From assembly GCA_965644295.1 (NCBI GenBank), contig CBFFRP010000164.1, positions 62,001 through 126,000 on the forward strand: a stretch of 64,000 nt of DNA. The letters are read 5' to 3'. This DNA is from Paraphysomonas bandaiensis (taxonomy: Eukaryota; Protista; Chrysophyceae). The notes beneath the pieces were generated by a model. It was given only the letters and a program-made list of their open reading frames with translations, did not search any database and was not told where the DNA came from. Below are positions 1,388 to 31,101 of this stretch, in pieces; positions within the stretch are counted from its first letter, which is position 1; each line of letters opens with the position of its first letter. Position numbers and translations under genes: made by a program.

Positions 1388-4172
1388 TTACTTTTTACCT
1401 TTACCTTTCTTGTCATCCTCGTTAGCACCGTCCTTTTGCATGCTTTCAATTTTCTTTATCCTGTCGTCCAGACCCGTCACAGCCAGCATGAAGGAAGTGA
1501 ATACTGCCTTATCGTCCTGGTATGTCACCGCTTGAAGAGCTAAGTTCTCAATAAACTCCATCGTGGTTAACGGTCTTGCCTTAATCATTGCCACGCGTCG
1601 ATTAGAAACTATCGTGCGCACGGTTCTCGCAATAGCACCAGCACTATACCCTTCCGATATATGAGCAAGCGAGGACAGATCGATCTTATCTACGCAAGAT
1701 TGTACCAGTTCAGTAATTTGTTGAGGTGTCGGTGGTGGTTGAGGTTTTGTAGCACTGTCAACAGCAGCAAGACGTTCTGCTTGTTTCTTACACCCAATAC
1801 GGATCTGTTCATCGATGTAGTGTCGCCATACAAGTACACGGGACGAGTAGTCTGGATAAGGGAAAAATAGAAAGCGATCAAAGAAATTCTTCAAATCTTT
1901 GACATCACCATTCTCTGGGCTTTTCGATGTTCCAATTATTATTACACGGTGGTGAGTCTCTAACGCTTGATTTTTATACAATAGCAGATCCTTTTTGAAC
2001 CTTGCCGGACCATCCTTATCTCCTTTAGATTTCTTACCACCACCTGTGAAGAACTGCTCACATTGATCCATGTACACAATCACCGGCTGGAAACTAGGAT
2101 CTCGGGCTACAGTCATTACCAAGTGAACCAGCTTAGTCGGCCCAGATTTACCCGGGAACAACCCGCGAAGTTTATCCGGTGTGAGGTGAATGAGCAAACC
2201 TCCCAGTTCATTTGCAACAGCTTCGACCATAAGAGTTTTACCTGATCCAGATGGTCCGAAAAGCATAATCGTTTTGATGTTATTCTCCTCTCTCATTTTA
2301 GCTTTGATATCTGGCGAACCATTGGGAAGAATGCAATACTCAGTAATTGTCTGGCGTATCTGTGCGATAGAGGGGTCCTGAATAGTTACTGTACTTTGAT
2401 CTTTGCGCTCAGCATTATGGTGCATGCTACCGAGGTAATTGAAATCGCCCACCATGTCTTGCACTTTTTTATTTTTGGTTCGTACGACAAGCTTGTTCTC
2501 AATCAATATCGCTAACATCTGATCCGGATCTAAGCCTTTCAGCTCAGATATTTTCTCACCTGGAAGAGGTTTTTTCTTCTTCCCTTTATCCTTCTTTCCT
2601 TTTTTGCCTTTACCCTTTTTACCTTTACCTTTCTTTCCCTTGCCACCTTTTCCTGGTGCAATTTGCATTCGGATCTTTTTCAGGTTCATGACTAACATGT
2701 CGTCCACCTGTCGACGTATCTCCTCGAAAACTCCAGGCCGAACTACATTTTTGGCAAGCTCGACATCGTGTCGTTGTTGAAAGTTCTCCGTTTCGTCACG
2801 GTTATCCCAAACTTCTTCGAACTCCTGCACGAGGTCATACATGGCTGCAGTTAGCTCTGTTTTCCCTTGTAGTTTCGGCATTTCACGGGGCTTTTCCTCC
2901 TTCGCACCCTTCTTGCCTCCCTTCGCATCTTTCTTATCCTTCTTATCAGCCTTTTTTTCCGGTTTCTTTGATGCTTTGGCATCAGCGACTTCATCTTCAG
3001 ATGCTTGCACCACTTTGGTAGCGTAAAACCCTTCTAAGTCCTCAGGAAACTTCTCTTGAGCGATCTCATCTGTAACCCACAATGTTCGCTCCTCCCGAAG
3101 ATTTTCACGCTTATCCGGCCCTTCCTCATCCATAATCACATCTTTCAGATCTTCAAGAGCTTTAAAATACAAATCTTTGTTTTCCTTCTGTTCCTGCTTC
3201 CGCTTCGTATATGCCATCTTCATCTCACTTTCGAGGCTCTCAACATTGTCCTTCCTTGGTCGCATGCCGACGAAAACAAGCTCATTTTCGCGTTCCAGAG
3301 CCGCCGCTTGTCTGCTTTGGTACCCGCGGAACATACGCTGAATATTGGTAGCAGCGATATCGCCATCCATCTCCACTTGAGCGGAGGCTTCGTACATACG
3401 GTTTTGTCTTTCCTTGTCGCGGACGTCTCGAACTAGCCGGGCACGTTCCTGACCCTGTCGCCCCCTTTCATTGCGTTGAATGATCTCAATAGCCTTTTCT
3501 AATGTCATATCCTCGCTAGGTAGCGCAGCTGTGAAATGGTCTTCCAAATAAAAGTTGTCGTTGTTCAGTTTTAAACGCATGTAACCCAACACGAGTCGGT
3601 CCCTCTGCTCAAGCTGTTTAGCATTATCTTCTCGAAAATATTTTGGCACTGGAATCTCTAGGGTATCAGGGGAAAGCTTCAAATCAACCAATATGTCGTC
3701 CAAATGAACATACTCCCAAGGAAATGCCTCCTCCGGACCACTAGGCATCCGGGTTTGAGAGTTCGGAGGATTCCAAATAACAAGGTCGTGTTTTAGTTCG
3801 ATAATCCGACGAATTACCAATTCTAGCATGTTTTTAACATGTAAACGTTTCTGAGGGTGTATCATACAGTCATAACACGTTTCTAAGCGGCGAAATATTT
3901 GAAGGTACTTGATATACAAGCATGCAAAGTGTTGAAATGCTTGAAATATGGTAACATCACGTGGTTCCTTCATATATACAGAGTCAATAAAGCAAAAAAT
4001 AAGTCAGTTTTCCTACCTGTTTACGCCCATCCTCGTCATCATCTTCATCTATTCCTTCTACATGAAGTTGTTCGTTGAGGTCAGCCATGGCATCTTGCCA
4101 CATAATATCGTAAGACCTGCAAGAGAGTTATTGACACACCTCATCTCTATAAGACACTTACGCATTCGCCAT
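1388..4172 (-). CDS. IQCA1: Dynein regulatory complex subunit 11 (IQ and AAA domain protein)
   Basis: ORF 1388-3973 has MIHPQKR, an IQ motif (IQRMFRGYQSR), a Lys/Gly-rich linker and Walker A GPSGSGKT. Upstream exons 4162-4172 and 4017-4116, joined by GT-AG introns 4117-4161 and 3968-4016, give the N-terminus MANASYDIMWQDAMADL. Confidence 0.93.
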
Positions 4173-5854
4173 AATGATTATAAGCTGATGATATCAGATG
4201 CTATTGACAGGTTTCACAGTATAAAACAACGCAACAATATCAGTGCGGTGTGTATGTATGTATATAATAATGACAGTGAAGTTACAGTGTTATGTGTATG
4301 GAATTGTACTGTCATGTGACTGTACACATCACTGCATATACATACATACATACACACACCTCTCTATACATACACTATAAACATACGACGAGCAGTTTCA
4401 AAAATCATGTCCGGTAACTACGACATATATACTCACCGTATACGGCTATGTATTACACCGCATATTGTACACCTGGACATGGTATCTGTATCTCATTGGT
4501 ATGCTATGTTTACCAATTCTGTATTTTCATTGGGTAGATTTCTTTATTGGTGTGCTCTATTAACCTATTCTGTGTTTTCATTGGCTATTCAGCTAACTGA
4601 AGTCATATGAGATGGCATATATACATGTATGTATATTACATTAATAATAATCTTTGAAGATGCTGTCTTGATAATGATGGTGATATCAATAATGTAGTGG
4701 CCCTTATCCAAGAGAGAGTATCCTCCTATATTGAGGACATATCATTATATGAGGGAACACTATTACAGATCATATTCAGTGTGAGATACATGTTATTCAA
4801 GGGAAGACTTGTTCCGGCCTGGTAAACGCGTGAATATATTCAATTTGAAGACCAAGGCATATGTTCCAATTGAATTGAAGATAATGATTGCCTTATGAAC
4901 ATTGGAGCATGTTTGCGACTCTGATACAGCAAGTGAACTCTTGGATATACCTCGTTCATCATATAGCCTGCTTGGCATCTCTTGCACAGTAGATTCAGTT
5001 GTTCGAAAATAGCAGCACAGGTTAGGGAATCAAATTGGTTCCAAGGTTTGCTAGTTCAACGAAAATAACGTGTCTATTCCTATGCATAGAGAACTGTTGT
5101 AATCATATTCTATTAACATTCATCGATTCACGTATACCCCTTAACGCGTGAATACAACAAGATAATATTCTGAAATATCAATTGACTAAATGATTACCAC
5201 ACTATATATGATACACTAACGTATGACTGGTCCCAATGCTCTAATTAACCGTGTCTTGCTATTACAGTATTAGGCTATATTCCTCATGTGAAGTATATAT
5301 GTAATTGAGCACTAAGACTGGCTATAAATCTTATTTTTAGTAGTAACCGTCATAACATTTAATAAGCAATTACTCTAACGTTCTCCATATTTCTTTTCAG
5401 AGTATAAAATCAATACCAATAGATAAATTGCTTAAAAACTAATTACCAAATAAAGGCTGGGTAAAATTCTAAACGATTTCTTCAACAGCCTCAATAAAGG
5501 CTTCAGCACTTGCAAAGTATTGAGTATCGCTATTCCTCAGCAAATCGGACTTGCACCTCTTCGTGGTGTTCTGGGAGAGAAATTTCTCGGGAAAACGTAC
5601 GTCATATGTGAGTGAATCAGTCGCCCTAATCTACGTTTTAAATTACTATTCGAATTCGTTGAAAATGCCATATATAGTAGTAAGATAAATAAATATAGAA
5701 GTATATAAATATATACACATCATTATTTAACAACCTGTCACAAATGACATTAATTGAACATTAAAATATTTACTTCTAGGTTTTAGTTTAACGCGCAGGT
5801 ACTACTATTGAAACTTTATAAGTTTTATGCATCGTAACTTGCTATTCTGACGAA

Positions 5855-7378
5855 CTAATGTATATTCGGTGGAGCTATTGCAACCTTTTCAGAAACACAG
5901 AGCGCTATTTTCGTCGGGTCATTGGGATCTGGTTTGACAAAACTAGCGAGCTTTTTCTCTCGTTGAAGTTGATCGTATGATAACGTTCTTTTAGATACTC
6001 TGGGACTTAAATATTCCTTGTTGCCACATCTAGGTGCATGTGGGGTTGGAAGCCTAGCTGTCACATTCGATCCTCTTGACATTGCATGCCGACTTCCCAC
6101 GCGACTGGATGCTATTGGAGAAGGGATTGGTTGTTTTGCGTCAGTCATCTCCACAGCACTCGATTCGTCAAAAGGCCAATTGTTAGTACTCACTCCGGGA
6201 GCTGGAGAGGATGCTACAATCAAATCGTTTTTTGGTGTGTGCGGCTGTGCCCATGTGTCAACGGGGCTAGCTTGCTGTATCCGTTGCAATACATCTTCTT
6301 CATCATGATTGCATACCTAATGTAAAGAAGAATAAGGTAAAGCAACAAAAGATTCATATGTACTTACTGGTACAATAAGATTTGACCCATCTGATTCTTT
6401 CATACGAACGAAGTGCATATCAGCACTGATTCCAGAGCGCTCAAGTGACGATTTGTTGAACACTACACCTGGACTACGAGGACGAACCTCACCTGCTGAG
6501 TGCGTGCGCCTTTTATTGCGATCCACTGGGGTGGCTGGCAAATTTCGAGCACTAGAGTGACTGGCGGCGGCAAATGAATAAGATGACTTCGGTTGTTTAT
6601 ATGAAGGCGGGGTGGACGAATTGCGAGGTGTCTTTTCATAGTCCTTGCTACGAATTCCGTAAAATTCATTCAAATCTCTCTTCGATTTGGTCTCCATGAA
6701 TGATGAAGGTCTGGACATGTATTAGAGCTTTCACTGTATACTACTGTACTATACCTAGTAGTGGGACCAACCGCACTGTACGTTTTCGGCTTCCAGAAAT
6801 CTCCCAGATCATACGTGCCAGGACTCACCAAAACTTTGTTAGATTGTTGGCTTATCTGAAAAAGAAACATAAGATAAAAGCAACAACGGCTTAAAGAGAC
6901 CAACCTTTTTTTTAACTTCGGGATCACACCTCTCCAACGGCCTAGTATAAATTTGTGCGCGAAGATAAGGTAATATTTTTCGTTGTCTTCCGAAATATTT
7001 TTGTCCCTTCTCAAAGAATTGCGGATATTGATTCGGCTTCACAGGTCCGCGTTCATTAACAGGTTTAGGAGAAACTAGACGACTCTGTAAATCAAACCTC
7101 TTCCCCTTATTCTTCCAGTGAAGTTCCTGCTCTTTAGCATATGCTTCGTACTCATGACTTTGAGATGTATTCGCGAGAGATGGGTTATAAATAGGCTCTT
7201 CCCAAAATGTTTTCTTAAATACAGGGTACTGCTTTTTCTCGGGAATAAGGCTACTCCTTGTTATATACGATGGAGCTCGAGAAAAATCCGCCTCACTTGA
7301 ACCTAGCGATATATTTTGTAATTCCGGATCAAGTTTGAACAGAGTTCCTGATGATTTCTTAGGACAAGTGGACTCCAT
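5855..7378 (-). CDS. Hypothetical Ser/Pro-rich protein, 4 exons
   Basis: ORFs 6839-7378, 6670-7014 (part), 6317-6718 and 5855-6289 join in frame through three short GT-AG introns. One SPGTY motif is reminiscent of PG-rich ciliary repeats. No firm family. Confidence 0.6.
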
Positions 7379-8087
7379 ATCTCAAAATAAGACTACTGAA
7401 TACTCGAAAACAGATCAATTAATGCAATAAACAACAACTAGAAAGGGTCCACAAACTAGAGAGCATACGTTTAATATTCCAAATACGCTCTGTTACAATA
7501 TCACTCCTTTCTTCTTATGATAACTTCAAGTAAAGCACATCGCCCTATCAAAAGCAGACAATACTGTCCCTTCTATTACTTTGTATTGAATAAAATAGGT
7601 CAGATCTAACAAGTATGACAAAGTATATATTCAATGAAGTTATTGATACTATTCAATCATATATTAATGCATACATGTATGGGCTGCAGGAGTATGTGAG
7701 TATATTAATAGCAGGGAAACCAATCAAACAGAAGACCATCACACAGCAGTTAGCGATGTATGTAACGTACCTCACTGTACTGTATGCGAGTTATACAACG
7801 TAGTACAGAAACATACGGCAGTATACAACTGTATATTGCTCCATATGTAGACTATGATACAGAGTCCATAGCTATGCCTACAAACGGGCCGGATGTGCTG
7901 TGGAGGTGTGTTGTAATTCCACTGCAGTCACACGTACCTGTTAATCTACATATCATTCAGGTTACTACACAACTCCAACACTATCAAGCCACTAAAAACC
8001 TGTCTAAGGTCTTAAGTTTCCGGATAAGTCTTTTACTTGTCGAGAGATATCTAAGGATTCGAAATAGGAGTGTTAATCTAAATTAAG

Positions 8088-8730
8088 ATGTCAAAACTAA
8101 ACGAGTTGCTTGTGAGTGTGCAGGTTAGTATACACCTTATAAGTGTAATTATATGATCTCATATTGATGAAAACACTTCATTTATTTTATGGTTGATTGT
8201 ATCGCACAGAAATTTTGCACTTCTGATGATTTCGAGGCTGAATTCGAAGCGTTTGCGAAGGAACACAGGTACCACATGAATTATTATTATAAAATAGGGA
8301 ATAGTAATCATGAAACTATGATTAGTGATACCTTCGCATCAGCAGTGGACTACAAATGTGATGGGGGTGAGCATCCTGTTGAATTCTTCGATGTATATAG
8401 GGATTATTTGTCCCGCTTCGAAGGACGAATTGAGGGTTTCATTATTGATGTAAGCGTGTAGACTGAGATGTTGCCATGCGAATATATAATATTTGTATAT
8501 TAGTTGGGATATAGCCCGAAAGACTTTTATACGGAATGCAAAGATATTCTTGAAGAGGAAGACGTGTTCGGGGATTTAAGGTGGTTTGTAGAAAAGCTAC
8601 TGGCGGTTAGTATTTTACTCCCATATATTTTTGTGCATTGTAATGCTGATGTTTTCAGGTCAGTGAATATGAGCAGTTTTTTGCGTTGATGCAATCTGAA
8701 ATGCATAAGTACCAGCCTTCTAGAAAATAA
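8088..8730 (+). CDS. BART-domain (ARL2-binding / CFAP36-like) small protein, multi-exon
   Basis: Spliced MSKLNELL..KFCTSDDFEAEFEAFAKEH..EHPVEFFDVYRDYLSRFEGRIEGFI..FVEKLLA..EYEQFFALMQ matches the ARL2_Bind_BART pattern. Stop TAA at 8728-8730. The first donor site is uncertain. Confidence 0.75.
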
Positions 8731-17754: not shown

Positions 17755-17858
17755 CTGGGCCTGGTAACCGTTAATGGTCCATTAATGGTAGTCCAGTTCC
17801 TGGCAATTATAATGCCATTACCATATTACCATTAACCATTAACGGTTACCAGGCCCTG
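17755..17858. mobile_element. hAT-type MITE (family 1), intact copy
   Basis: 23-bp TIR c(a/t)gggcctggtaaccgttaatgg. Flanks cattagac and cactagac form an 8-bp TSD with one mismatch. Confidence 0.88.
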
Positions 17859-22976: not shown

Positions 22977-23295
22977 CTGGCACACGTCTATGTTAGTGTC
23001 GTATGTACGTGAGGGGGGTCTGTGAGACTCTTAACAGTCCCCTTCACGTATATATATGAACAGGCATCGCATTAGTGGAGGGGTTGATGAGAATATGACG
23101 GTCAAGTAGATAGATATCGACTTCTGGTGTAGAAATCATCTTGTTTCATGGCACGATTGTCAGTTTAAAGTAACATAAAGATGAACGTAAGTTGACATAC
23201 ACAGAGTTCATATGGCAGTTCACCATACAACACCAATATACAACAGTATACACATAAATACACATACTACCGTTCTGTTCAACCAGTGTTTGTAC

Positions 23296-23420
23296 GTATC
23301 AGCATCCTTTGTATATTTTTGTTCAGAGATGCCTCTAATATTGAGACAATAATTATCTGTATTCCAGCCGTAGTTGTACTCCAGTAATGTAGAGTATTTT
23401 TACTTCAATTTATTCCCGAA
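23296..23420. repeat. ~125-bp dispersed duplicate (second copy ~27208-27332)
   Basis: The core gatgcctctaatattgagacaataattatctgtatt is shared by both copies. The minus strand reads as a coding fragment (YNYGWNTDNYCLNIRGIS). Confidence 0.85.
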
Positions 23421-23771
23421 ACTTAAACGTCTATACATGCAGATGCCCAGATAGTAACACAAAATCCAGATTATAATAGTAGCTCCTAATGGGTGTGCGA
23501 CGTGATTATATTCGCCTGTGTGGTGGTATTGAGGGGGAGTGTACAGTGTTTATTCCTCATGTCTATACCAGGACCTGGTAACCATTAATGGTTAAACCGG
23601 TATACCACTTTAAGGTATACCAACACAAAATCTCCTTCCTGTCGTAGAACGCTACCAATTTCCTGTAGATCCACCTGCCTATTAGGGGGAGGGCGGTGTT
23701 AATAGCCAAAGAAGGCAGCCACTGTAAGCAAGAGAATTGTAACTTAAAACACCATATGTGCCGTAACGGGG

Positions 23772-24660
23772 TTAGCTTGTAACGTTCTTTGATGAATTCA
23801 TAGACTTGGCGGTCGCGCCCAAAAACGAATTCGGACGACAGCTCCATGGTATATTCGTGCAGAAGTTTTTCGGCGGTTTCGTTGTATTTGAAACGAATAT
23901 CGGGGTTTTCGTTAAGAGAAAGTAGAGCGTTGAAGTAAAGCCTATCCAACTGTAATGGGACCCAATATCTATGGTGTCTGGCAGCGCATAGGGTGGTTGT
24001 AAGGACCGGAAAAACCTGAGTGATCGGACTTCATTGTTAATGATTGCCTCATTGCACCATTGCTGTACAGTTTTGTCAGGAAAATAGTCAGGAAAGAGTA
24101 TTTCTAGCATGTCCACACTTTATCACATACTTAGCATATGTATCCGCGTTATCTATGAACATCTCATGCACGACAAGCACACGGAAAGTTTCGATACAGT
24201 TAAGAGCAATGGCATTTGTCACGATACTATGCGTCGGGAGCATGTCGAATTTTTGGAAAACCCATTTGTAGAATATGTCTAGTTCCGGATGTGACATCCC
24301 CTTTTGGTAAATAAAAATGTTGAATTTTGCAGTATCAAATTTTAAGCCCGGAAATAACTTGTGAATCATCGTCAACCTCTCGCGCACGTTTTTCACGTTG
24401 TGGCCATAGTATGGTCGGAAGTTTTTGACCAAGGTGGCACACCAGTATGGGTATGGGTAGTTCTTGTCCGGTAAGCTGAAATTTTCCAGCACCCAATGGA
24501 CAGTGCTTTCCAAAGCAGCCATGGGACATAACATAAACACCTCGGGAAGAAGACATTCGCCTATATCGTCGACCATTTCATTATCGCCAGGAGGGCATAT
24601 GGCAATTCATGATATGCTGGAACAATTCAATGTCTTCGTAGCTAGATATGGATTTGACAT
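23772..24660 (-). pseudogene. Frameshifted intronless gene, divergent ankyrin-like repeat protein
   Basis: Overlapping ORFs 24088-24576 and 23772-24116. Helical repeats AIALNCIETFRVLV, VIKCGH..MLEIL and AIINNEVRSLRFFRSLQPP resemble degenerate ankyrin repeats. The 5' boundary is approximate. Confidence 0.45.
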
Positions 24661-25803
24661 ACAATAAGTATCGTTCCATGCGCGTTGTAGGGTCTATAAA
24701 CCTATCCAATATACGCTGCACAAGTGCGGGAAATTCCAAAGCAAACGCGGGCTGTGTAATACTGTATATAATTAGCTAAATACTAGAATCACTCGCTCAT
24801 TCGTATTTCATTTCGCTCATCCTCGTTGTAGTATCACATACATAAACTACCACGTAGTAGCTAGTGCGTAGCCTTCTTCGTTCTGGCAAGAGCGAGCCTC
24901 TCCTCCTCGCCTCTGGCTGGTGAATTATAGCTCAAGAATCTCTTAGAAGGCACACCCAAACAAGAACACAGAACACAAACAACGCGCAAGCTGCTACACA
25001 ATCTGTTACCTGCTACTACCTCATAACCTCTGCCCTAATAAATGCGCTGATTGTACATAGCTAGCTATAGCTAGATAACTAGATAGTGTGCATTGTGGCT
25101 GATTAATAACTGTACTAGCTCGAGTAAAACTTTTCGAGCGACCTTTTCTTCTTCTTACTCCTTTTGGCCGACCTCGACTGTCTCCTACAGTGCGTCGTCA
25201 TTCCTCTTTGAGCGATACATGCTACAACATAATAACAGGAGATCCTTTGCATTGCATGCAATAATTCTTCACCACAAAAATACTTCGAAGTTCTCCTTCC
25301 GAGAAGCTCACTACTTGCCCAATACAAGCTACTGCTACGTACATAACATGTATACCAAGTACAAAGCAAACCACGGCGGAACTTTTCATGGCTACTACGT
25401 GTCTCTCCGTCCGCCCAGCCACTCTCCAGAAGGTTATTTTGGAACGTTGTGTTGCTGCCGCGACGACTCTTTCTAGCTAAATAAAAGCGGAAACTGCTTT
25501 TAGCTGACCGACGAGCCGTATAAGTTAGTTGTGGTGGAATGAAGCATGAAGATAACAAATTTAACAATAGTTCGCTGCTCGTCAAAGAGTAATGTTAATC
25601 TTAATTATATTAATTAAAGTCTGATCTTTAACTTTGTACTTTATTAGGCTACATTCCTACAATACAAACAAAGTACTGGTATGCGATACATATGGTGCAG
25701 GTCATAAAGCATCGCATAGCATGTCACTTTGTGTGAACAATCTAAAAATGAATAGCTTCTATATGAAGGCCCTTGGAAGGAGCATACGAGAAGTTTATTT
25801 GAA

Positions 25804-27090
25804 TTATATATTGTTCACTGGACCGAAGAATTCGTAGTTGATTTGATTCTCCGGAATCTGCCATTCGCGCAAGCCGCCATAGATCTTCTGCATGAACTCC
25901 GTCGGCCCACAGAAGTAATAGTGCGAATCGCGATCCACAACGAGGGAATCGATGTTTCGCATTAGCGTGTTTCCATCTGGAAACTTCGTCACATCGTCGT
26001 CATAAAGAGACTTGATGGTCAGGTTGCTGCGCTGCTTGGTCTTGCAGAGATGCTCGATCTCATCATGCATGGCCTCTCCCTCTGGCGATCTCCATGTCTG
26101 AATCATCGTGACATGATTCTTGATGTTTGTGTTCTCCATGATATATTCCAACATACACAAACTAGGAGTTATCCCCACCCCCCCGCTGATCAGCACTATC
26201 GGCTTTTCATCCGGAACCTTCAAGTAATAATCTCCACAAGGTACCCCCACTTGAATCGCATCGCCGACCTTCACCTGAGTATGCAGATGTGTCGATACAG
26301 CCCCGGGAGGACAGTCGGGAAGCAATGGGGCTGCTTTCTTGACTGTGATGCGATATCCATCTTTTCCGGGGGCAGAGGAGAGGGTGTAGTTGCGCACGGT
26401 CACACCAGATGCAGTTGGGACTCGAATCGCAATGTACTGGCCGGGTAAGTAATCAAGGATTGGTTTTCCATCCGCAGGTTTCATTACAAAGGAAACGATG
26501 TTGCCTCCCTCGGGGGTGACGCTATCTACCTTGAATTCCCGATAGCCTTCCCAACCGCCCACCGCTTCGGCCTTTTCATTTCGAAGCTTGCGTTCTCGTT
26601 CGATGAGTAAATATGCAAGAAAATCGTATGCCTCACTCCATGCAGCGGCAACCTCAGGAGTGACGGCATCTTTGAGAACTTTTACGACTGCCCACATCAG
26701 ATTCTCCTTTACGAATTCATACTGATGAGGTAAAACATGAAGCGAAACATGCTTCTGAGCGATGCGTTCAACAGCTTCTGATAAAGCACCGAGATTGTCA
26801 ATGTTGGCTGCATATGCATGTATGCTACAAGCTAAAGCATATGGCTGACGAGCTTTTACTTCCCCTGGAAGAACGACTTGGTGCGTGGGATTGAACATGT
26901 CTTTGACTGGGCTGTTTTCACTAAGCATGCGCTTATACATTTCTGTTGTTATCGTATAACCATGTTCTGCCATGACAGGGGCCGTGGACTTAACAATTCG
27001 AATCGTCTCAGGACTCAAACTTGGTGTAGTTGATAGTCCACGAGCGGACCTTGCAACAAGTTTTGTCTTCAAAAGAAAATTGCGGAACAT
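25804..27090 (-). CDS. hmp: Flavohemoglobin (nitric oxide dioxygenase) with N-terminal mitochondrial-type presequence, intronless
   Basis: Globin domain: ITTEMYKRM, QPYALA..YAANIDNL, IAQKHVSL..QY, AAWSEAYDFLA. FAD domain: PGQYI, RNYTLSS. NAD domain: GGVGITP, YFCGPTEFM, YEFFGP. Confidence 0.95.
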   Translation of the reverse strand: MFRNFLLKTKLVARSARGLSTTPSLSPETIRIVKSTAPVMAEHGYTITTEMYKRMLSENSPVKDMFNPTHQVVLPGEVKARQPYALACSIHAYAANIDNLGALSEAVERIAQKHVSLHVLPHQYEFVKENLMWAVVKVLKDAVTPEVAAAWSEAYDFLAYLLIERERKLRNEKAEAVGGWEGYREFKVDSVTPEGGNIVSFVMKPADGKPILDYLPGQYIAIRVPTASGVTVRNYTLSSAPGKDGYRITVKKAAPLLPDCPPGAVSTHLHTQVKVGDAIQVGVPCGDYYLKVPDEKPIVLISGGVGITPSLCMLEYIMENTNIKNHVTMIQTWRSPEGEAMHDEIEHLCKTKQRSNLTIKSLYDDDVTKFPDGNTLMRNIDSLVVDRDSHYYFCGPTEFMQKIYGGLREWQIPENQINYEFFGPVNNI

Positions 27091-28099
27091 GGTGTTTGCA
27101 CTGATTAGCTTAGGAGTTGTTCAATAATGAATTTATAGCTCAGGGTTGCAAAAATAATGATTCGCTAAGATTAAATTCACATTGAAGAAAACCACTAGTT
27201 TGGAATCGTATCGGCATCATCTGTATATTTTTGTTCCAAGATGCCTCTAATATTGAGACAATAATTATCTGTATTCGAGCCGTAGTTGTATTGCAGTAAT
27301 ATAGAAGGTTTTTGCTTCAATTTACTCCCGAAAAAGTAAGATGCTAGAGTTCAACCTTCAACCAAATTCAAGCGTTATTGCGATATTGTAATACAATATA
27401 TACACTGCATAATATAACGCCATATACTTCTATGTGCCCTATGCATATCTTATGAAGTCACTTCAAGTACTAAACTGAAAAGAACATCCTCATTTCTCTT
27501 TGTATATTGTGATGTTGTATTACAGTAGTACAGCTGTACTTTGCGGTCCACGCATGAAGGTTAAGAGTGATAGTTAACGCATAGCTAACATGAGAGTTAT
27601 CATTCATGACTGCTGTGTAAGTGTTCTGGATTGAGAGTAATGCTCTTAGGGTGTAATGCGCAGGTAACCAATACTGGCCAACGGTGGTGCCCCATCCAGA
27701 GCTATACTTCTAGCTCTTCTACAATTCACTATACTTGAGAGCAAAGCCCTTCTACACGGTCTACTCTCCATATCATCATCATTCTTACACATATCTCACT
27801 ATAATCCCGTGCCGAGGTTGCTCCATACAGTACAGTGCATTGCAGATCAGTGTGTGTGTATGTCTATGCGGCTATCTGTGTGCTGCACCTGCATCGGCAG
27901 TAGGGGGGGTTGTAGGCCCGGGGCTGAGGCGGGAGCTGGTGATGATTAAACCGGTATACCAACACAATCGTCGTTGTTGTTGTTGTGTTATTATTGTCAC
28001 GGTTGTTCAGTTTCATTGTCGAACCACAAAACAACCACCAATAATGGTTCTGCTGACAACTCATTCATACAGTGAAAAAATTGTATAATTTAATACAAT

Positions 28100-28686
28100 A
28101 TGCAATTCATATTCCATAGGAAATATAGTACCACAATAGAAAATAATTCCAATCTGGCCCAGTTACAAACTTTGATTGTGGAAATGCTCCAAGAATTTCG
28201 AGATTCTGACCCTAGTGTTATGGAACGGAGCAGGCCAACCTTTCAACCTGACGAGTATGATGTTCTAATCACTGATATCGCAGAAAATGATTTGATTTCT
28301 ATCGGGAATGAGCTGGGCTATAAGCGCCTTGAAACCACTGAACGAGTTACCGAATATCCAATTTATGGAATTATGTATGGTGCTAATTTTCGAGTATTTG
28401 TACCGTTCGTTGTTCAGAAACGTAAAATCAAGGTTAATGTTAATTATTTGTTCGATAGTGGCTCACCTTGTACGTACCTTCGAAATGACACGCTAATGGC
28501 ACTTGGATTCCAGGAGTTCATACCTAACGATACGAACGTAATAATTAATGGCAAAGGAATGACTGTATATCGATCAAAGGCGCATATCGAAAACATTGAT
28601 TGCTGGGACAGGACTTTATGAGGTGTGCATCACTACTTGTGACACTAAATTATTCTTTGCTCGAGGTCACAGTTGCTACAGTCTGA
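28100..28686 (+). pseudogene. Retropepsin-like (clan AA) aspartic protease, one frameshift near the C-terminus
   Basis: Catalytic VNYLFDSGSPCTYL. The conserved LLGQDF motif lies in the -1 frame at ~28600 (gattgctgggacaggac) and runs to TGA 28684-28686. Confidence 0.65.
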
Positions 28687-29269
28687 TTCTTTATCTTAAC
28701 AAAAGAATGGTTAAGAAATCACAATTGATTTCCCACGATGTTATCTTAAAACAATCTTCCAAGTATAGAAAAATAATAAGCGAACCAAATCAAGTGAGAT
28801 TAACACCCAAGATAGTTCCCAAACTAAATTTTACTTAATGATTTAACTTTAACAATTAAACCCTTACGGGGTATACCGGTTTAAGTACATTATTCAACTA
28901 GTAACAAGCACACTTTAATTTATTTTATTTAGCTTTAAAACATTCACGCCCACCCTACACACTACTAGCTATTAAACCGGTATACCCCGTAAGTGTGTTG
29001 GTATACCCTAAAGGGGTATACCGGTTTAGAATTCGTTTATTATCACAAAAATTATAAAAGAAACAAAATGAAATATTGTATTTTTAACCAAAAACGAAAA
29101 CATACATATACCGCAAATAAGTTCAACCGAATTTCTCAGTACATTTTGGTATGTATTTATTTATTTGTGGTTCTGTTATTTATTTTATTATTGCTATTAG
29201 TTTGTCATACCATTACCGAAAATAAATATTATCGTCGATACAAAAAATGGTTAATACATGTTCGTTGGA

Positions 29270-29416
29270 CAGACATTTGCGAGGCGACTTCAGTGCGATG
29301 TGTGTTGATATGCAAATGCTAATAGGATAGAAAGTCGATGGACATAGCTCGAGCAGAAGGTCACAAAGAAATTATTGCCATCCTGGAACAGAGATTGGCC
29401 AGCTTGTCGACCTAAT
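29270..29416 (+). pseudogene. Ankyrin-repeat C-terminal fragment
   Basis: SMDIARAEGHKEIIAILEQRLASLST* is a typical terminal ankyrin repeat. The upstream frame is interrupted. Confidence 0.5.
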
Positions 29417-29622
29417 AATGAGGTGTGAGTTGGCCAATTGTTGTTCAAGGATCACAAAAATTTCCTTATGGCCTTCTTCTCGAGCTAAGTCTAGCGCAGA
29501 CTTTTCATCCTGTCCATATCATAGTTGTGTGTTAATATTTGTGATAAAGAATAGTATAGGCGGCAAATACTAAACCGGTATAACACATTGACCATATCAT
29601 TGTGTGGGTATACCGGCTTAAC

Positions 29623-29788
29623 AATCTCCCTACGGAATCCCGTGGTCTTTTTTGTATGGAACATAGCCGTGAACATATGGTGGATTCCGAGTGCACCAGT
29701 CGTGGGCGCATTTTCTTTCTCTCACATCCACCATATGTTCACGTTTATGTTCCATACGAAACAATCCTCGTGTTTCCGTAGGGAGATT
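29623..29788. mobile_element. Fold-back element / long imperfect inverted repeat (~60-bp arms)
   Basis: aatctccctacggaa..tatggaacat..cgtgaacatatggtgga pairs with tccaccatatgttcacg..atgttccata..ttccgtagggagatt. Confidence 0.75.
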
Positions 29789-31101
29789 TAAACCGGTATA
29801 CCCCTTTAAGGTATTCCAACACAATGGTAGTGCAGCTCCCGTCAATTATAAAGGTATTACCATTAATGGCCCATTAATGCCATTACAATTAACGGTTACC
29901 AGGCCCTGGTGTATACACGTAGAACGTGTTAGATGTCGTCTTAAATTCATATTTTACGTAATACTACATAGTCATCACTACATAGTCATACCTTCGTGCA
30001 TATTTCAAAAAAATGCCGCCAAAAACTGCGGTGCTACTAATGTAAGTATATAAGTGTCACTTGTGTAGACGTCTTTGGGCTTTGTTGAATAAATAGGCAT
30101 CCGGGAATGGACCTTGGTTCTTGCGGTGACGCACAATCAGCTTCTTAGTAGGGCTAAATAGTAGCATATAAGAGTTACTCAATAGTTAGTTAATTGCTTT
30201 GCCACATTGTTCTGACTTTTACACCCCTATTGCTGAGAACCAGACATTCACTACAATTATTCATACTACAAGGGTTAGAAATTGGGAATACTTTGTACAA
30301 GGTAGGAAATAGGATCAGATAGTCATATCACTGATGATACTTGTCATCAGACAGTCGTCACCATGTACAAGTTATTTTACCAAATTGAAACTCATGTAGT
30401 ACTCTATGCGCTATGTACAATTAGATTGGAGCAGCATATTTTAAAGTATTTATTGGCTGAAGATGCTACAAATCAGAAGTAACAAATCCTTCAAAGCAAA
30501 TGAAACTTATGACGATTACTTGGTACTATAGCACATATTAAGTCAGTAAAAGTTACGCTCTTGCTCTTGCTGTAGCCCACTATTAGAAGTCGGCATCCGC
30601 AGGTTGATTGTTTAATTCACTTACTCGAAATGGCCATCACTACCAAGTTACCAATTAAGCCCCTTCATATCTACCAATTTGGTTCTTCTAACTAGTAAAG
30701 ATTTAATTGAGCTAGTGCTTCATAATCCTTCATCATGTCATCTTGTTGTCGGTAGTGTGGCTCAAGGTATCAGTTTCTAACTCTACACGCTTATCTAAGA
30801 AATAGAATCACCGTATATATATCTTATTTCTCTGAGATTCAGTTTTGATGAATTGTTACGCGATGTTTATTGATATGCCGGTGTAGCGCGTGCTCTTGTA
30901 TTGCTGAGAGACCTCTTTATATAGATATGGGTATGGATTGGTATATCTGTCTCCTCCAGATATGGAAATTGGGATAAACAGAGTCCTGAGTATCTAGATA
31001 CATTCTCTGTTGGGGTATTCGCTGTATAGGGTGAATACAGCAGTATATGCTGCACGAAATTTAGGATATGCATGTTGACAGGCAGAGCTGCTCATTGAGA
31101 G

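What the first reader, a model, noticed from the sequence alone, without database searches (positions are those of the whole stretch)
23569..29908. Cargo-carrying mobile unit: a 6.2-kb gene-bearing segment inserted into a hAT MITE, bounded by direct 36-bp dyad sites
Seen: a family-1 hAT MITE (intact copy at 17755-17858) is split into halves at 23569-23591 and 29824-29908 that retain a 7/8 TSD. The insert starts and ends with the same-orientation site ttaaaccggtatacc-N7-ggtat(a/t)ccaacaca and is flanked by atgg on both sides (possible 4-bp TSD). It carries an intact flavohemoglobin, an ankyrin-like gene, a retropepsin-like gene and an ankyrin fragment, all apparently intronless, and no recognisable transposase. 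Inference: a non-autonomous element that moves accessory genes, including NO detoxification. Short direct dyad termini do not fit standard TIR or LTR classes.
Basis: partly seen in the sequence, partly recalled or inferred. Interest (0 to 1): 0.88.

Follow-up and report, generated by a model that had tools for sequence, protein, structure and literature searches.

The report
Gene-carrying insert bounded by hairpin repeats
A 6.2-kb piece of DNA carrying a working nitric-oxide-detoxifying gene really does sit inside a small transposon, and it starts and ends with the same 36-base hairpin; this looks like the trace of an unclassified way of moving genes, but only this one event is seen and no moving enzyme or empty site was found.

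Summary
A hAT-type MITE is split at 23591/23592 and 23823+6000 (29823/29824). It keeps a 7/8 target duplication. The 6,232-bp insert begins and ends exactly with a 36-bp unit, here called S: TTAAACC-GGTATACC-N7-GGTATACC-AMCACA, a 9-bp hairpin. ATGG is truly duplicated beside the insert.

S1 and S7 share a substitution found in no other copy, so they are sister copies. S is not unique to this locus. About 16-20 full and about 25 partial copies are scattered over 62.5 Mb. Nearly all are solo, lack target duplications, fall into subfamilies, and sit mostly at 3' ends of ordinary genes. Seven S-derived sites lie inside this insert and none elsewhere in the 64-kb window.

The flavohemoglobin is intact and transcribed. 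The retropepsin-like call is weakly supported. The 'ankyrin' calls are not supported.

The insert is single-copy. No transposase or recombinase lies in or beside it. Four DNA runs all carry the cargo, and three of them bridge the right junction. No empty site or circle junction was seen.

Best reading (about 0.4): a one-off, old, S-dependent translocation of host genes by an enzyme acting in trans. A repeatedly active cargo transposon is not shown. The scan also noted this stretch as s1-439170 and s1-439422.

The parts
23561..23568 (.). left copy of the MITE's 8-bp target duplication (GTCTATAC)
   Evidence: matches 29909-29916 at 7/8
23569..23591 (+). left part of the split hAT-type MITE (TIR CAGGACCTGGTAACCATTAATGG; last 4 bp ATGG)
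   Evidence: 21/23 to the family TIR
23592..23627 (+). S1, full 36-bp hairpin unit, left end of the insert
   Evidence: 55.6 bits
23566..24775 (-). three or four overlapping broken reading frames ('ankyrin-like'); orphan, probably a pseudogene
25619..27137 (-). flavohemoglobin transcription unit (CDS 25804-27090, 428 aa), intact and unspliced
27205..27345 (.). copy of a ~140-bp very high-copy MITE nested in the cargo (a second copy lies at 23281-23421 outside it)
   Evidence: (D1)
27946..27966 (+). S2, single-core form (TTAAACC-GGTATACC-AACACA), inside the 5' part of the retropepsin-like transcript
28100..28621 (+). retropepsin-like ORF (173 aa, shorter at the C-terminus than its 225-aa paralogues); covered by a 99.4%-identical contig of another strain spanning 27664-28811
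28856..28884 (.). S3, hybrid form L-spacer-core-L' (TTAAACC CTTACGG GGTATACC GGTTTAA)
   Evidence: I6-I8
28972..29029 (.). S4: a half unit (28972-28993, +) abutting a full S on the minus strand (S4b, 28994-29029)
   Evidence: 58.6 bits
29570..29621 (.). S5 (partial, +, 29570-29587) and S6 (single core, -, 29601-29621)
29623..29788 (.). local foldback: 63-nt arms, 86% complementary, unique to this locus
   Evidence: (I1)
29788..29823 (+). S7, full 36-bp unit, right end of the insert; sister of S1
29824..29908 (+). right part of the split MITE, beginning with the duplicated ATGG
29909..29916 (.). right copy of the MITE's target duplication (GTGTATAC)

Best explanation
The segment 23592-29823 is a real, fairly old, single-copy translocation of host-type DNA into a hAT-type MITE. 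It carries one functional flavohemoglobin, one transcribed retropepsin-like gene, and decayed ORFs.

Its ends are two sister copies of S. S is a 36-bp hairpin unit with fixed asymmetric flanks. It belongs to a small, dispersed, transposon-like repeat family.

Most likely mechanism (inferred, not shown): the DNA between two co-oriented S units was taken out and re-inserted by an enzyme supplied in trans that recognises S. My preferred version is a tyrosine-recombinase, Crypton-like route. In it the segment leaves as a circle and joins to the target at the short identity (A)ATGG. The alternative version is a hairpin-recognising HUH enzyme, as in IS200/IS605 or Replitrons.

Shown: the insertion, its exact S boundaries, the ATGG duplication, the sisterhood of S1 and S7, and the dispersed S family.

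Inferred: dependence on S, the enzyme class, and the circular intermediate.

Odds: about 0.4 that the event depended on S and a dedicated enzyme. Within that, about 0.2-0.25 for the recombinase version and about 0.15 for the HUH version.
For: - The insert starts at the first base of S1 and ends at the last base of S7.
- S1 and S7 alone share A at unit position 22 (spacer ...CTTTAA...) among 16 full copies. Each differs from the other by only 2 of 36.
- ATGG is duplicated relative to intact MITE copies.
- S is far commoner than chance. The 33-nt pattern gives 15 hits against 0 in the control. The L-core 15-mer gives 51 against 4.
- S copies at unlinked loci share diagnostic substitutions, forming subfamilies AAACC..AACACA, AAGCC..ACCACA and AAACC..AACTMA. 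That is the signature of copy-and-spread.
- All 9 exact GGTATACC cores in the 64-kb window, and all model hits, lie inside the insert.
- Other S clusters exist on C297, C181, C427 and C578.
- An S...gene...half-S arrangement recurs around two retropepsin-like paralogues that share only about 45-50% protein identity. Homologues in other organisms have no S.
- S has the layout of a recombinase core site: two inverted arms around a 5-7-nt asymmetric spacer. Hybrid (L..L') and single-core forms occur inside the island.
- CryptonS elements end in 5-6-bp direct repeats, mostly TATGG (PMC3212892). Replitrons have short direct terminal repeats plus a hairpin (PMC10288648).
Against: - Only one such event is seen, and the cargo is single-copy.
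- No recombinase, HUH or transposase domain lies in the insert.
- The genome gives only 6 sub-threshold PF00589 matches, none near an S cluster.
- Solo S copies have no ATGG or any other flanking repeat.
- Outside the window, every exact double-core dyad has the standard L..R polarity, so no recombination hybrids are seen there.
- No empty site, one-site allele, circle junction or S-to-S deletion appears in four DNA runs. The cargo's internal order is the same in a second strain.
- The direct S pair on C427 is not a sister pair and shows no flanking repeat.
- If crossover was at AATGG, the two nearest GGTATACC cores would lie 17 nt apart. That is unlike known 6-8-nt recombinase spacers.
Confidence: 0.4

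Rival explanations
1. This is a one-off repair event with no dedicated machinery. S would be a host structural or regulatory hairpin that marks gene 3' ends and is prone to breakage or polymerase stalling. A chromosomal chunk delimited by two such hairpins was captured at a break in the MITE with 4-bp microhomology or fill-in. The clustering of S then reflects local duplication and inversion of a fragile palindrome.
For: - Solo S copies sit mostly between convergent ordinary genes, 40-420 bp past stop codons. Neighbours include Sec31-like, Aha1, hydrolase, RING, acylphosphatase and RabGAP genes.
- Inside the cargo, S1 and S3/S4 also lie at gene 3' ends. The other-strain contig of the retropepsin-like gene stops 45 bp before S3.
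- The right kilobase of the insert is a tangle of local inverted duplications unique to this locus.
- There is no enzyme, no second event and no polymorphism.
Against: - Breaks at fragile palindromes normally fall inside the palindrome, but both terminal S units are complete to the base.
- S1 and S7 are sisters rather than two unrelated 3'-end copies.
- S copies decay by stem-breaking changes rather than compensatory ones and form subfamilies, as neutral mobile copies do.
- With only about 20-45 copies in 62.5 Mb, S cannot be a general terminator.
- S2 lies in a 5' leader, not at a 3' end.
Confidence: 0.3
2. Two-step site-specific route, similar to an integron or IS26. First a solo S entered the MITE. 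Later a circle carrying one S and the cargo recombined with it, S against S. This left S on both sides.
For: - Direct S repeats at both ends share a spacer variant, and spacer identity is required for strand exchange in tyrosine-recombinase systems.
- Many solo S copies could serve as landing sites.
- Cassette-sized spacings of about 710-775 bp recur between neighbouring S sites at five loci.
Against: - It does not explain the duplicated ATGG, because solo S copies elsewhere have no flanking duplication.
- No integrase was found.
- Orientations inside the island are mixed.
- The interiors of the about 750-bp units are unrelated.
Confidence: 0.12
3. The whole 6.34-kb unit (23569-29908) is a cargo-bearing non-autonomous hAT element. 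Either it transposed here as one piece, or it is the parent from which the 104-bp MITEs arose by internal deletion between the two ATGG microhomologies. In the second case repair synthesis would have stalled at the S hairpins.
For: - hAT-type TIRs and an 8-bp duplication bracket the whole unit.
- Deleting between the two ATGGs recreates the MITE sequence exactly.
- Hairpins are plausible stall points.
Against: - No hAT transposase or relic lies inside.
- The MITE family is multi-copy and diverged, with variable interiors, so it cannot descend from this transposase-less single-copy unit.
- S units are independent modules found elsewhere without MITE ends.
Confidence: 0.07
4. Mis-assembly or chimeric join at repeated sequence.
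For: Logan contigs break at S4 and at the MITE, where k-mers repeat.
Against: Contigs from several independent runs and studies bridge both junctions and the whole interior at 100% identity. RNA contigs and a second strain agree with the internal order.
Confidence: 0.02

Closest known systems
Crypton DNA transposons (tyrosine recombinase), especially CryptonS of stramenopiles
   Same: No terminal inverted repeats. A 4-6-bp direct repeat at the two ends reflects identity with the target. Here it is (A)ATGG, against the common TATGG of CryptonS (PMC3212892; PMC13465315). A circle-integration model fits. First-stage notes report many Crypton-like elements in this genome (s1-439306, s1-442381; I did not test this).
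   Different: No recombinase gene in the unit. It has 36-bp hairpin direct repeats at the ends, which Cryptons are said to lack. It carries host genes. No family of copies exists.
Replitrons (eukaryotic Rep/HUH copy-and-paste transposons)
   Same: Short direct terminal repeats plus a terminal hairpin. The one active family shows an orientation-specific target ending in RG and a short, variable target duplication; ATGG ends in GG (PMC10288648).
   Different: Replitron repeats are about 6 bp and the hairpin is at the right end only. Replitrons are multi-copy with conserved termini of about 50 bp and encode Rep. Here the repeat is the 36-bp hairpin itself, and no Rep gene was found in the insert. 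The rest of the genome could not be searched.
IS200/IS605 insertion sequences and REP/BIME elements of bacteria
   Same: Hairpins on the same strand at both ends. No inverted repeats. Dispersed solo hairpin units lack target duplication, have conserved single-stranded flanks, and occur singly or in mixed-orientation clusters.
   Different: These are bacterial systems. IS200/IS605 makes no duplication. The Y1 transposase is absent from the insert and untested in the genome. The cargo here is 6 kb of eukaryotic genes.
Starships and other cargo-mobilising elements of fungi
   Same: A cargo of host-beneficial genes flanked by short direct repeats, with movement through a circle proposed (PMC10104507; bioRxiv 10.64898/2026.09.21.753150).
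   Different: Starships are tens to hundreds of kilobases, carry their own 'captain' recombinase at one end, and are known only from Pezizomycotina.
Integron gene cassettes (attC hairpins)
   Same: Imperfect-palindrome sites that fold as hairpins and separate short gene-sized units. Solo and clustered sites both occur.
   Different: No integrase or attI. Site orientations are mixed. Only one or two units contain a credible gene. This is a eukaryote.

Membership tests
Crypton | encodes a tyrosine recombinase | tested here: not met
   No recombinase domain in any ORF of the insert. Genome-wide there are only 6 sub-threshold PF00589 hits, none near S clusters. It could still be a non-autonomous relative.
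Crypton | 4-6-bp direct repeats at both ends matching the target; no TIRs | tested here: met
   ATGG/AATGG lies on both sides, and intact MITE copies have one ATGG.
Crypton | no long terminal direct repeats | tested here: not met
   36-bp direct repeats S1 and S7.
Crypton | circular intermediate or empty site restored | tested here: inconclusive
   No joint in Logan contigs of 4 runs. However, contigs drop rare forms, and only 24101-30100 could be laid.
Replitron | Rep HUH endonuclease gene | tested here: not met
   None in the insert.
Replitron | short direct terminal repeats with a right-end hairpin | tested here: inconclusive
   Direct repeats are present, but they are 36 bp and the hairpin is at both ends. 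Replitron repeats are about 6 bp (PMC10288648).
Replitron | multi-copy family with alignable termini | tested here: not met
   Only the 36-bp unit recurs. The sequence just inside the ends is unique.
IS200/IS605-like | sub-terminal hairpins on one strand at both ends; no TIRs | tested here: met
   S1 and S7 are co-oriented and fold at -6.9 and -2.8 kcal/mol. Consensus copies fold at -8.4, z about -4.
IS200/IS605-like | no target duplication; insertion 3' of a fixed tetranucleotide | tested here: inconclusive
   ATGG on both sides could be a target plus the element's own last four bases. One event cannot tell. Solo S copies have no common flank.
IS200/IS605-like | Y1 transposase | not testable with these tools
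   Absent from the insert.
Helitron | 5' TC ... CTRR 3' ends, insertion between A and T, 3' hairpin | tested here: not met
   The ends are TTAAACC... and ...AACACA, and the flanks are G|T and A|A.
hAT / other TIR transposons (for the insert itself) | terminal inverted repeats and a class-specific duplication | tested here: not met
   The ends are direct. Only the palindromic cores and a 7-mer (AATCTCC) match in inversion.
hAT MITE (for the host element) | about 20-bp TIRs and an 8-bp duplication | tested here: met
LTR retrotransposon / retrozyme | TG...CA long terminal repeats, primer-binding site, polypurine tract | tested here: not met
   The repeats are 36 bp and start with TT. No reverse transcriptase is present. 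The copia element near the C143 solo S is a separate insertion with its own 5-bp duplication.
Integron cassette array | co-oriented attC sites after each ORF, plus integrase and attI | tested here: not met
   S4b and S6 are inverted, no integrase is present, and most intervals lack a credible gene.

The most novel reading that the evidence does not exclude
S is the cis-site of a eukaryotic hairpin-specific strand-transfer system, working like IS200/IS605-REP or integron attC. This system excises, flips and re-inserts gene-sized pieces of host DNA. The 6.2-kb insert would be a cassette island assembled by it. The solo S copies would be empty landing sites or footprints. The other clusters (C297, C181, C427, C578) would be further islands.
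Probability: 0.15. Interest if true: 0.9.

Novelty: new variant of a known kind. Interest (0 to 1): 0.58.

Why it matters
Outside fungal Starships, eukaryotic mobile elements that carry useful host genes are rare. Elements whose ends are short co-oriented hairpins are known mainly from bacteria.

If S-bounded segments are really mobilised, two things follow. It would give a compact protist system for moving functional genes, here NO detoxification. It would also add a new kind of terminal architecture to eukaryotic transposon classification.

If it is instead a one-off repair event, it still documents a small hairpin repeat family with an unusual distribution at gene 3' ends.

Tried and rejected
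1. S as an LTR or primer site of the copia element next to the C143 copy. Rejected: the copia has its own 300-nt LTRs (99% identical) and a CTGCT duplication about 360 bp away.
2. The 29599-29823 foldback, or S4b..S7, as a MITE family. Rejected: the interior is unique in the genome.
3. The inner flank of S1 homologous to the foldback arms. Not significant beyond a 7-8-mer.
4. Recombination hybrids (L..L', R'..R) elsewhere in the genome. None found.
5. S in marine metagenome contigs. 0 hits and 1 chance hit.
6. Rfam. Only chance microRNA-like hits on the palindromes.
7. Tyrosine-recombinase genes near S clusters. None found.
8. Empty site or joints in reads. None found. The apparent joint 29824->24101 is only S1 in a contig matching S7.
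9. The two about 245-aa ORFs beside the C423 and C419 solo copies. They are unrelated.
10. S as an inherent flank of the retropepsin-like gene family. It is absent around homologues in other organisms and around the C210, C338 and C28 paralogues.
11. Structure of the retropepsin-like protein. Mean pLDDT 45, unusable, so no fold search was run. A profile search against PDB gave nothing.
12. Literature search for GGTATACC and for the run accessions. Nothing relevant.
13. Reading the C297, C181 and C217 clusters. 

Full report
**Setting.** The window is G000:C164:62001-126000 of a 62.5-Mb, 669-contig assembly of a marine, flagellated protist. The window encodes a BBSome subunit. GC is about 40% throughout, and the insert is not compositionally distinct.

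**1.
- The intact MITE at 17755-17858 and the split copy share the terminal motif CAGGGCCTGGTAACCGTTAATGG.
- The split copy lies at 23569-23591 and 29824-29908. It is flanked by GTCTATAC and GTGTATAC, a 7/8 match.
- Between the halves lie 6,232 bp (23592-29823).
- The first 36 bp (S1) and the last 36 bp (S7) are the same unit in the same orientation: TTAAACC GGTATACC N7 GGTATACC AMCACA. The pattern is not expected by chance (0 in 100 shuffles).
- Three other family members read ...TTAATGG|TAGTGCAG... with one ATGG. The ATGG on both sides of the insert is therefore a true 4-bp duplication, or AATGG if the last A of S7 is counted.
- Logan contigs from three runs bridge the right junction. Contigs from two runs extend across S1. 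Assembly error is therefore excluded.

**2. What S is.**
- S folds as a 9-bp stem with a 5-nt loop, flanked by fixed unpaired tails. Folding energy is -8.4 kcal/mol, z about -4.
- Genome-wide, the 33-nt pattern has 15 matches against 0 in the control. The left half TTAAACCGGTATACC has 51 matches against 4.
- Sixteen full copies were read. Nearly all are alone on their contig, with unrelated flanks and no flanking duplication.
- The copies fall into subfamilies that share substitutions at unlinked loci. They decay by stem-breaking changes. This is the pattern of a small mobile repeat, not of a conserved regulatory site.
- Oriented by S, the nearest upstream ORFs mostly run toward S and so do the downstream ones. 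Solo copies therefore sit between convergent ordinary genes: Sec31-like, Aha1, an S33 hydrolase, a RING protein, an acylphosphatase and a RabGAP.
- Every exact double-core dyad in the genome has the same polarity.
- S is absent from marine metagenome contigs and from Rfam.

**3. The insert is an S island.**
- All nine exact GGTATACC cores of the 64-kb window, and all covariance-model hits, lie inside the insert.
- Besides S1 and S7 there are five more S-derived sites:
  - S2, a single-core form.
  - S3, a hybrid with the left tail on both sides.
  - S4, a half unit abutting a full inverted S.
  - S5, partial.
  - S6, a single-core form, inverted.
- A 63-nt-arm foldback is found nowhere else in the genome.
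- Among the 16 full copies, only S1 and S7 carry A at position 22. They differ from each other at two private positions. They are sister copies, about 3-6% diverged, so the event is not recent. The 1/8 mismatch in the MITE's own duplication agrees with that.
- A 7-mer, AATCTCC, lies seven bases inside the inner core at both ends, but in inverted orientation. S is therefore 'flipped' relative to a short inner inverted repeat. I cannot explain this.

**4. Cargo.**
- The flavohemoglobin is complete (globin, FAD and NAD domains).
- Four RNA-derived contigs match 27137-25619 exactly and without splicing.
- Its nearest named relatives are oomycete nitric oxide dioxygenases at about 50% identity. The genome has three other copies at about 40% identity.
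- The 173-aa ORF at 28100-28621 belongs to a conserved family of 207-238-aa proteins seen in environmental contigs. The family has invariant D-[ST]-G-S and LLGxD motifs. Twelve of 14 members give sub-threshold Asp_protease_2 hits.
- The structure model was too poor to use.
- The 'ankyrin-like gene' is a set of overlapping broken frames. It has no Pfam hit and no homologue, only a language-model resemblance to ankyrin clusters.
- I found no ankyrin fragment.
- A high-copy 140-bp MITE and other repeats have since landed in the cargo.
- No ORF of 55 aa or more has a transposase, recombinase or Rep domain.

**5. A second S-bounded unit.**
- The retropepsin-like gene in the window lies between S2 and S3.
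- Its paralogue on C578 shares about 45-50% protein identity. It has a full S about 190 bp upstream and a core-plus-tail half-site about 70 bp past its stop.
- The related C146 pseudogene has a decayed S-like stretch at the same upstream place.
- Homologues in other organisms and the C210, C338 and C28 paralogues have none.
- S therefore travels or persists with this gene in part of the family. This is hard to reconcile with neutral decay unless S is maintained or re-acquired.
- Neighbouring S sites are repeatedly 710-775 bp apart: C427, C181, C297 twice, window S4b-S7, and C578 after removing a later 1.7-kb insertion. Yet the two interiors I could read are unrelated.

**6. Tests of mobility.**
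- The 6.2 kb is single-copy.
- Four DNA runs under four organism labels carry it at about 100% identity.
- One run (X13) shares two variants with a 99.4%-identical JGI contig. It is therefore a second strain with the same internal order. Its junctions were not covered.
- No empty site, one-site allele, S-to-S deletion or circle joint was seen. These are contigs, which hide rare forms. Only 24101-30100 could be laid.
- Six weak PF00589 matches exist in the genome, none near an S cluster.

**7. Interpretation.**
- No standard class fits. The ends are not inverted, so TIR classes are excluded. They are not TG...CA long repeats, so LTR is excluded. They are not TC...CTRR, so Helitron is excluded.
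- The closest parallels are:
  - Cryptons, which have short direct repeats identical to the target, commonly TATGG in stramenopile families (PMC3212892).
  - Replitrons, which have short direct terminal repeats plus a hairpin and, in the one active family, a short duplication at an RG target (PMC10288648).
  - Bacterial IS200/IS605 with their REP offshoots, which have co-oriented hairpin ends and solo hairpins without duplications.
- I favour an S-dependent, enzyme-mediated translocation in trans (about 0.4), with a Crypton-like circle route slightly ahead of an HUH route.
- The main rival (about 0.3) is a one-off repair capture of a chromosomal chunk delimited by fragile 3'-end hairpins.
- A two-step S-by-S integration (about 0.12) explains the sister spacers but not the ATGG.
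- A cargo-bearing hAT element or MITE parent (about 0.07) lacks any transposase relic.

**8. Verdict.**
- The claim of a cargo-moving element is plausible but unproven.
- It is best filed as a possible new variant of recombinase- or HUH-type non-autonomous elements.
- It is worth a targeted follow-up at the listed S clusters and in other isolates.

Noticed in passing
window 27205-27345 and 23281-23421: Two copies (89% alike) of a ~140-bp MITE with over 2,000 candidate matches genome-wide at 84-93% identity. One copy sits in the cargo just upstream of the flavohemoglobin start, the other just left of the split MITE.
   Followed up: partly
window 27399-27521 and 27607-27710: Further high-copy repeats inside the cargo, with depth hundreds to thousands of times the flanks in all four runs. 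Copies also lie at L024:8547-8669 and L029:1356-1439.
   Followed up: no
window 23628-23635 and 29781-29789; also 29622-29629: The 7-mer AATCTCC lies seven bases inside the inner GGTATACC core at both ends of the insert in inverted orientation, and again next to S6. S therefore appears flipped relative to a short inner inverted repeat. Unexplained.
   Followed up: partly
window 23575-23587 vs S units: The MITE's terminal motif GGTAACCGTTAA equals the S half-site GGTATACCGGTTTAA minus three single bases. At the left junction the two face each other around TGG. This may be chance.
   Followed up: no
G000 C427:140189-140972, C181:137092-137870, C297:638650-639375 and 645034-645765: Neighbouring S sites are repeatedly 711-764 bp apart, in both direct and inverted pairs. 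The window pair S4b-S7 is 773 bp apart. The two interiors read are unrelated.
   Followed up: partly
L037 (C143:124500-134499) 1614-7136: An apparently intact copia-type retrotransposon with ORFs hitting gag (sub-threshold), zinc knuckle and an integrase SH3-like domain. Its ~300-nt LTRs are 99% identical and it has a 5-bp duplication CTGCT. It lies about 360 bp from a solo S but is independent of it.
   Followed up: yes
L027 (C578:15700-25699) 6477-8201: A 1.7-kb insertion with an 11-bp duplication AACAATAAGAA splits the C578 retropepsin-like gene. A second copy of the same element lies at about 2394-4100 of the locus. Its long ORF is low-complexity.
   Followed up: partly
L025 (C182) vs L028 (C643): About 1.5 kb around a solo S is 95% identical between two contigs. 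These are either diverged haplotypes assembled separately or a recent segmental duplication. Both carry an identical S.
   Followed up: no
L054 (JGI Ga0186469_109867) = window 27664-28811: A contig from another sample is 99.4% identical and shares two variants with run X13. It shows a second strain and that S2 lies within this contig, probably a transcript, of the retropepsin-like gene. The contig stops 45 bp before S3.
   Followed up: partly
L033 (C210:1-10000) 3475-4361 and 4486-5372: Two inverted 887-bp copies of the retropepsin-like gene face each other about 125 bp apart. They are 97-98% identical to a copy on C338.
   Followed up: no
G000 C97:115084-116220 and 117944-119080; C80:303075-304211: Other flavohemoglobin genes at about 40% identity to the cargo copy. 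Two on C97 lie about 2.9 kb apart on the same strand with identical scores. The C80 copy has an in-frame TAG.
   Followed up: no
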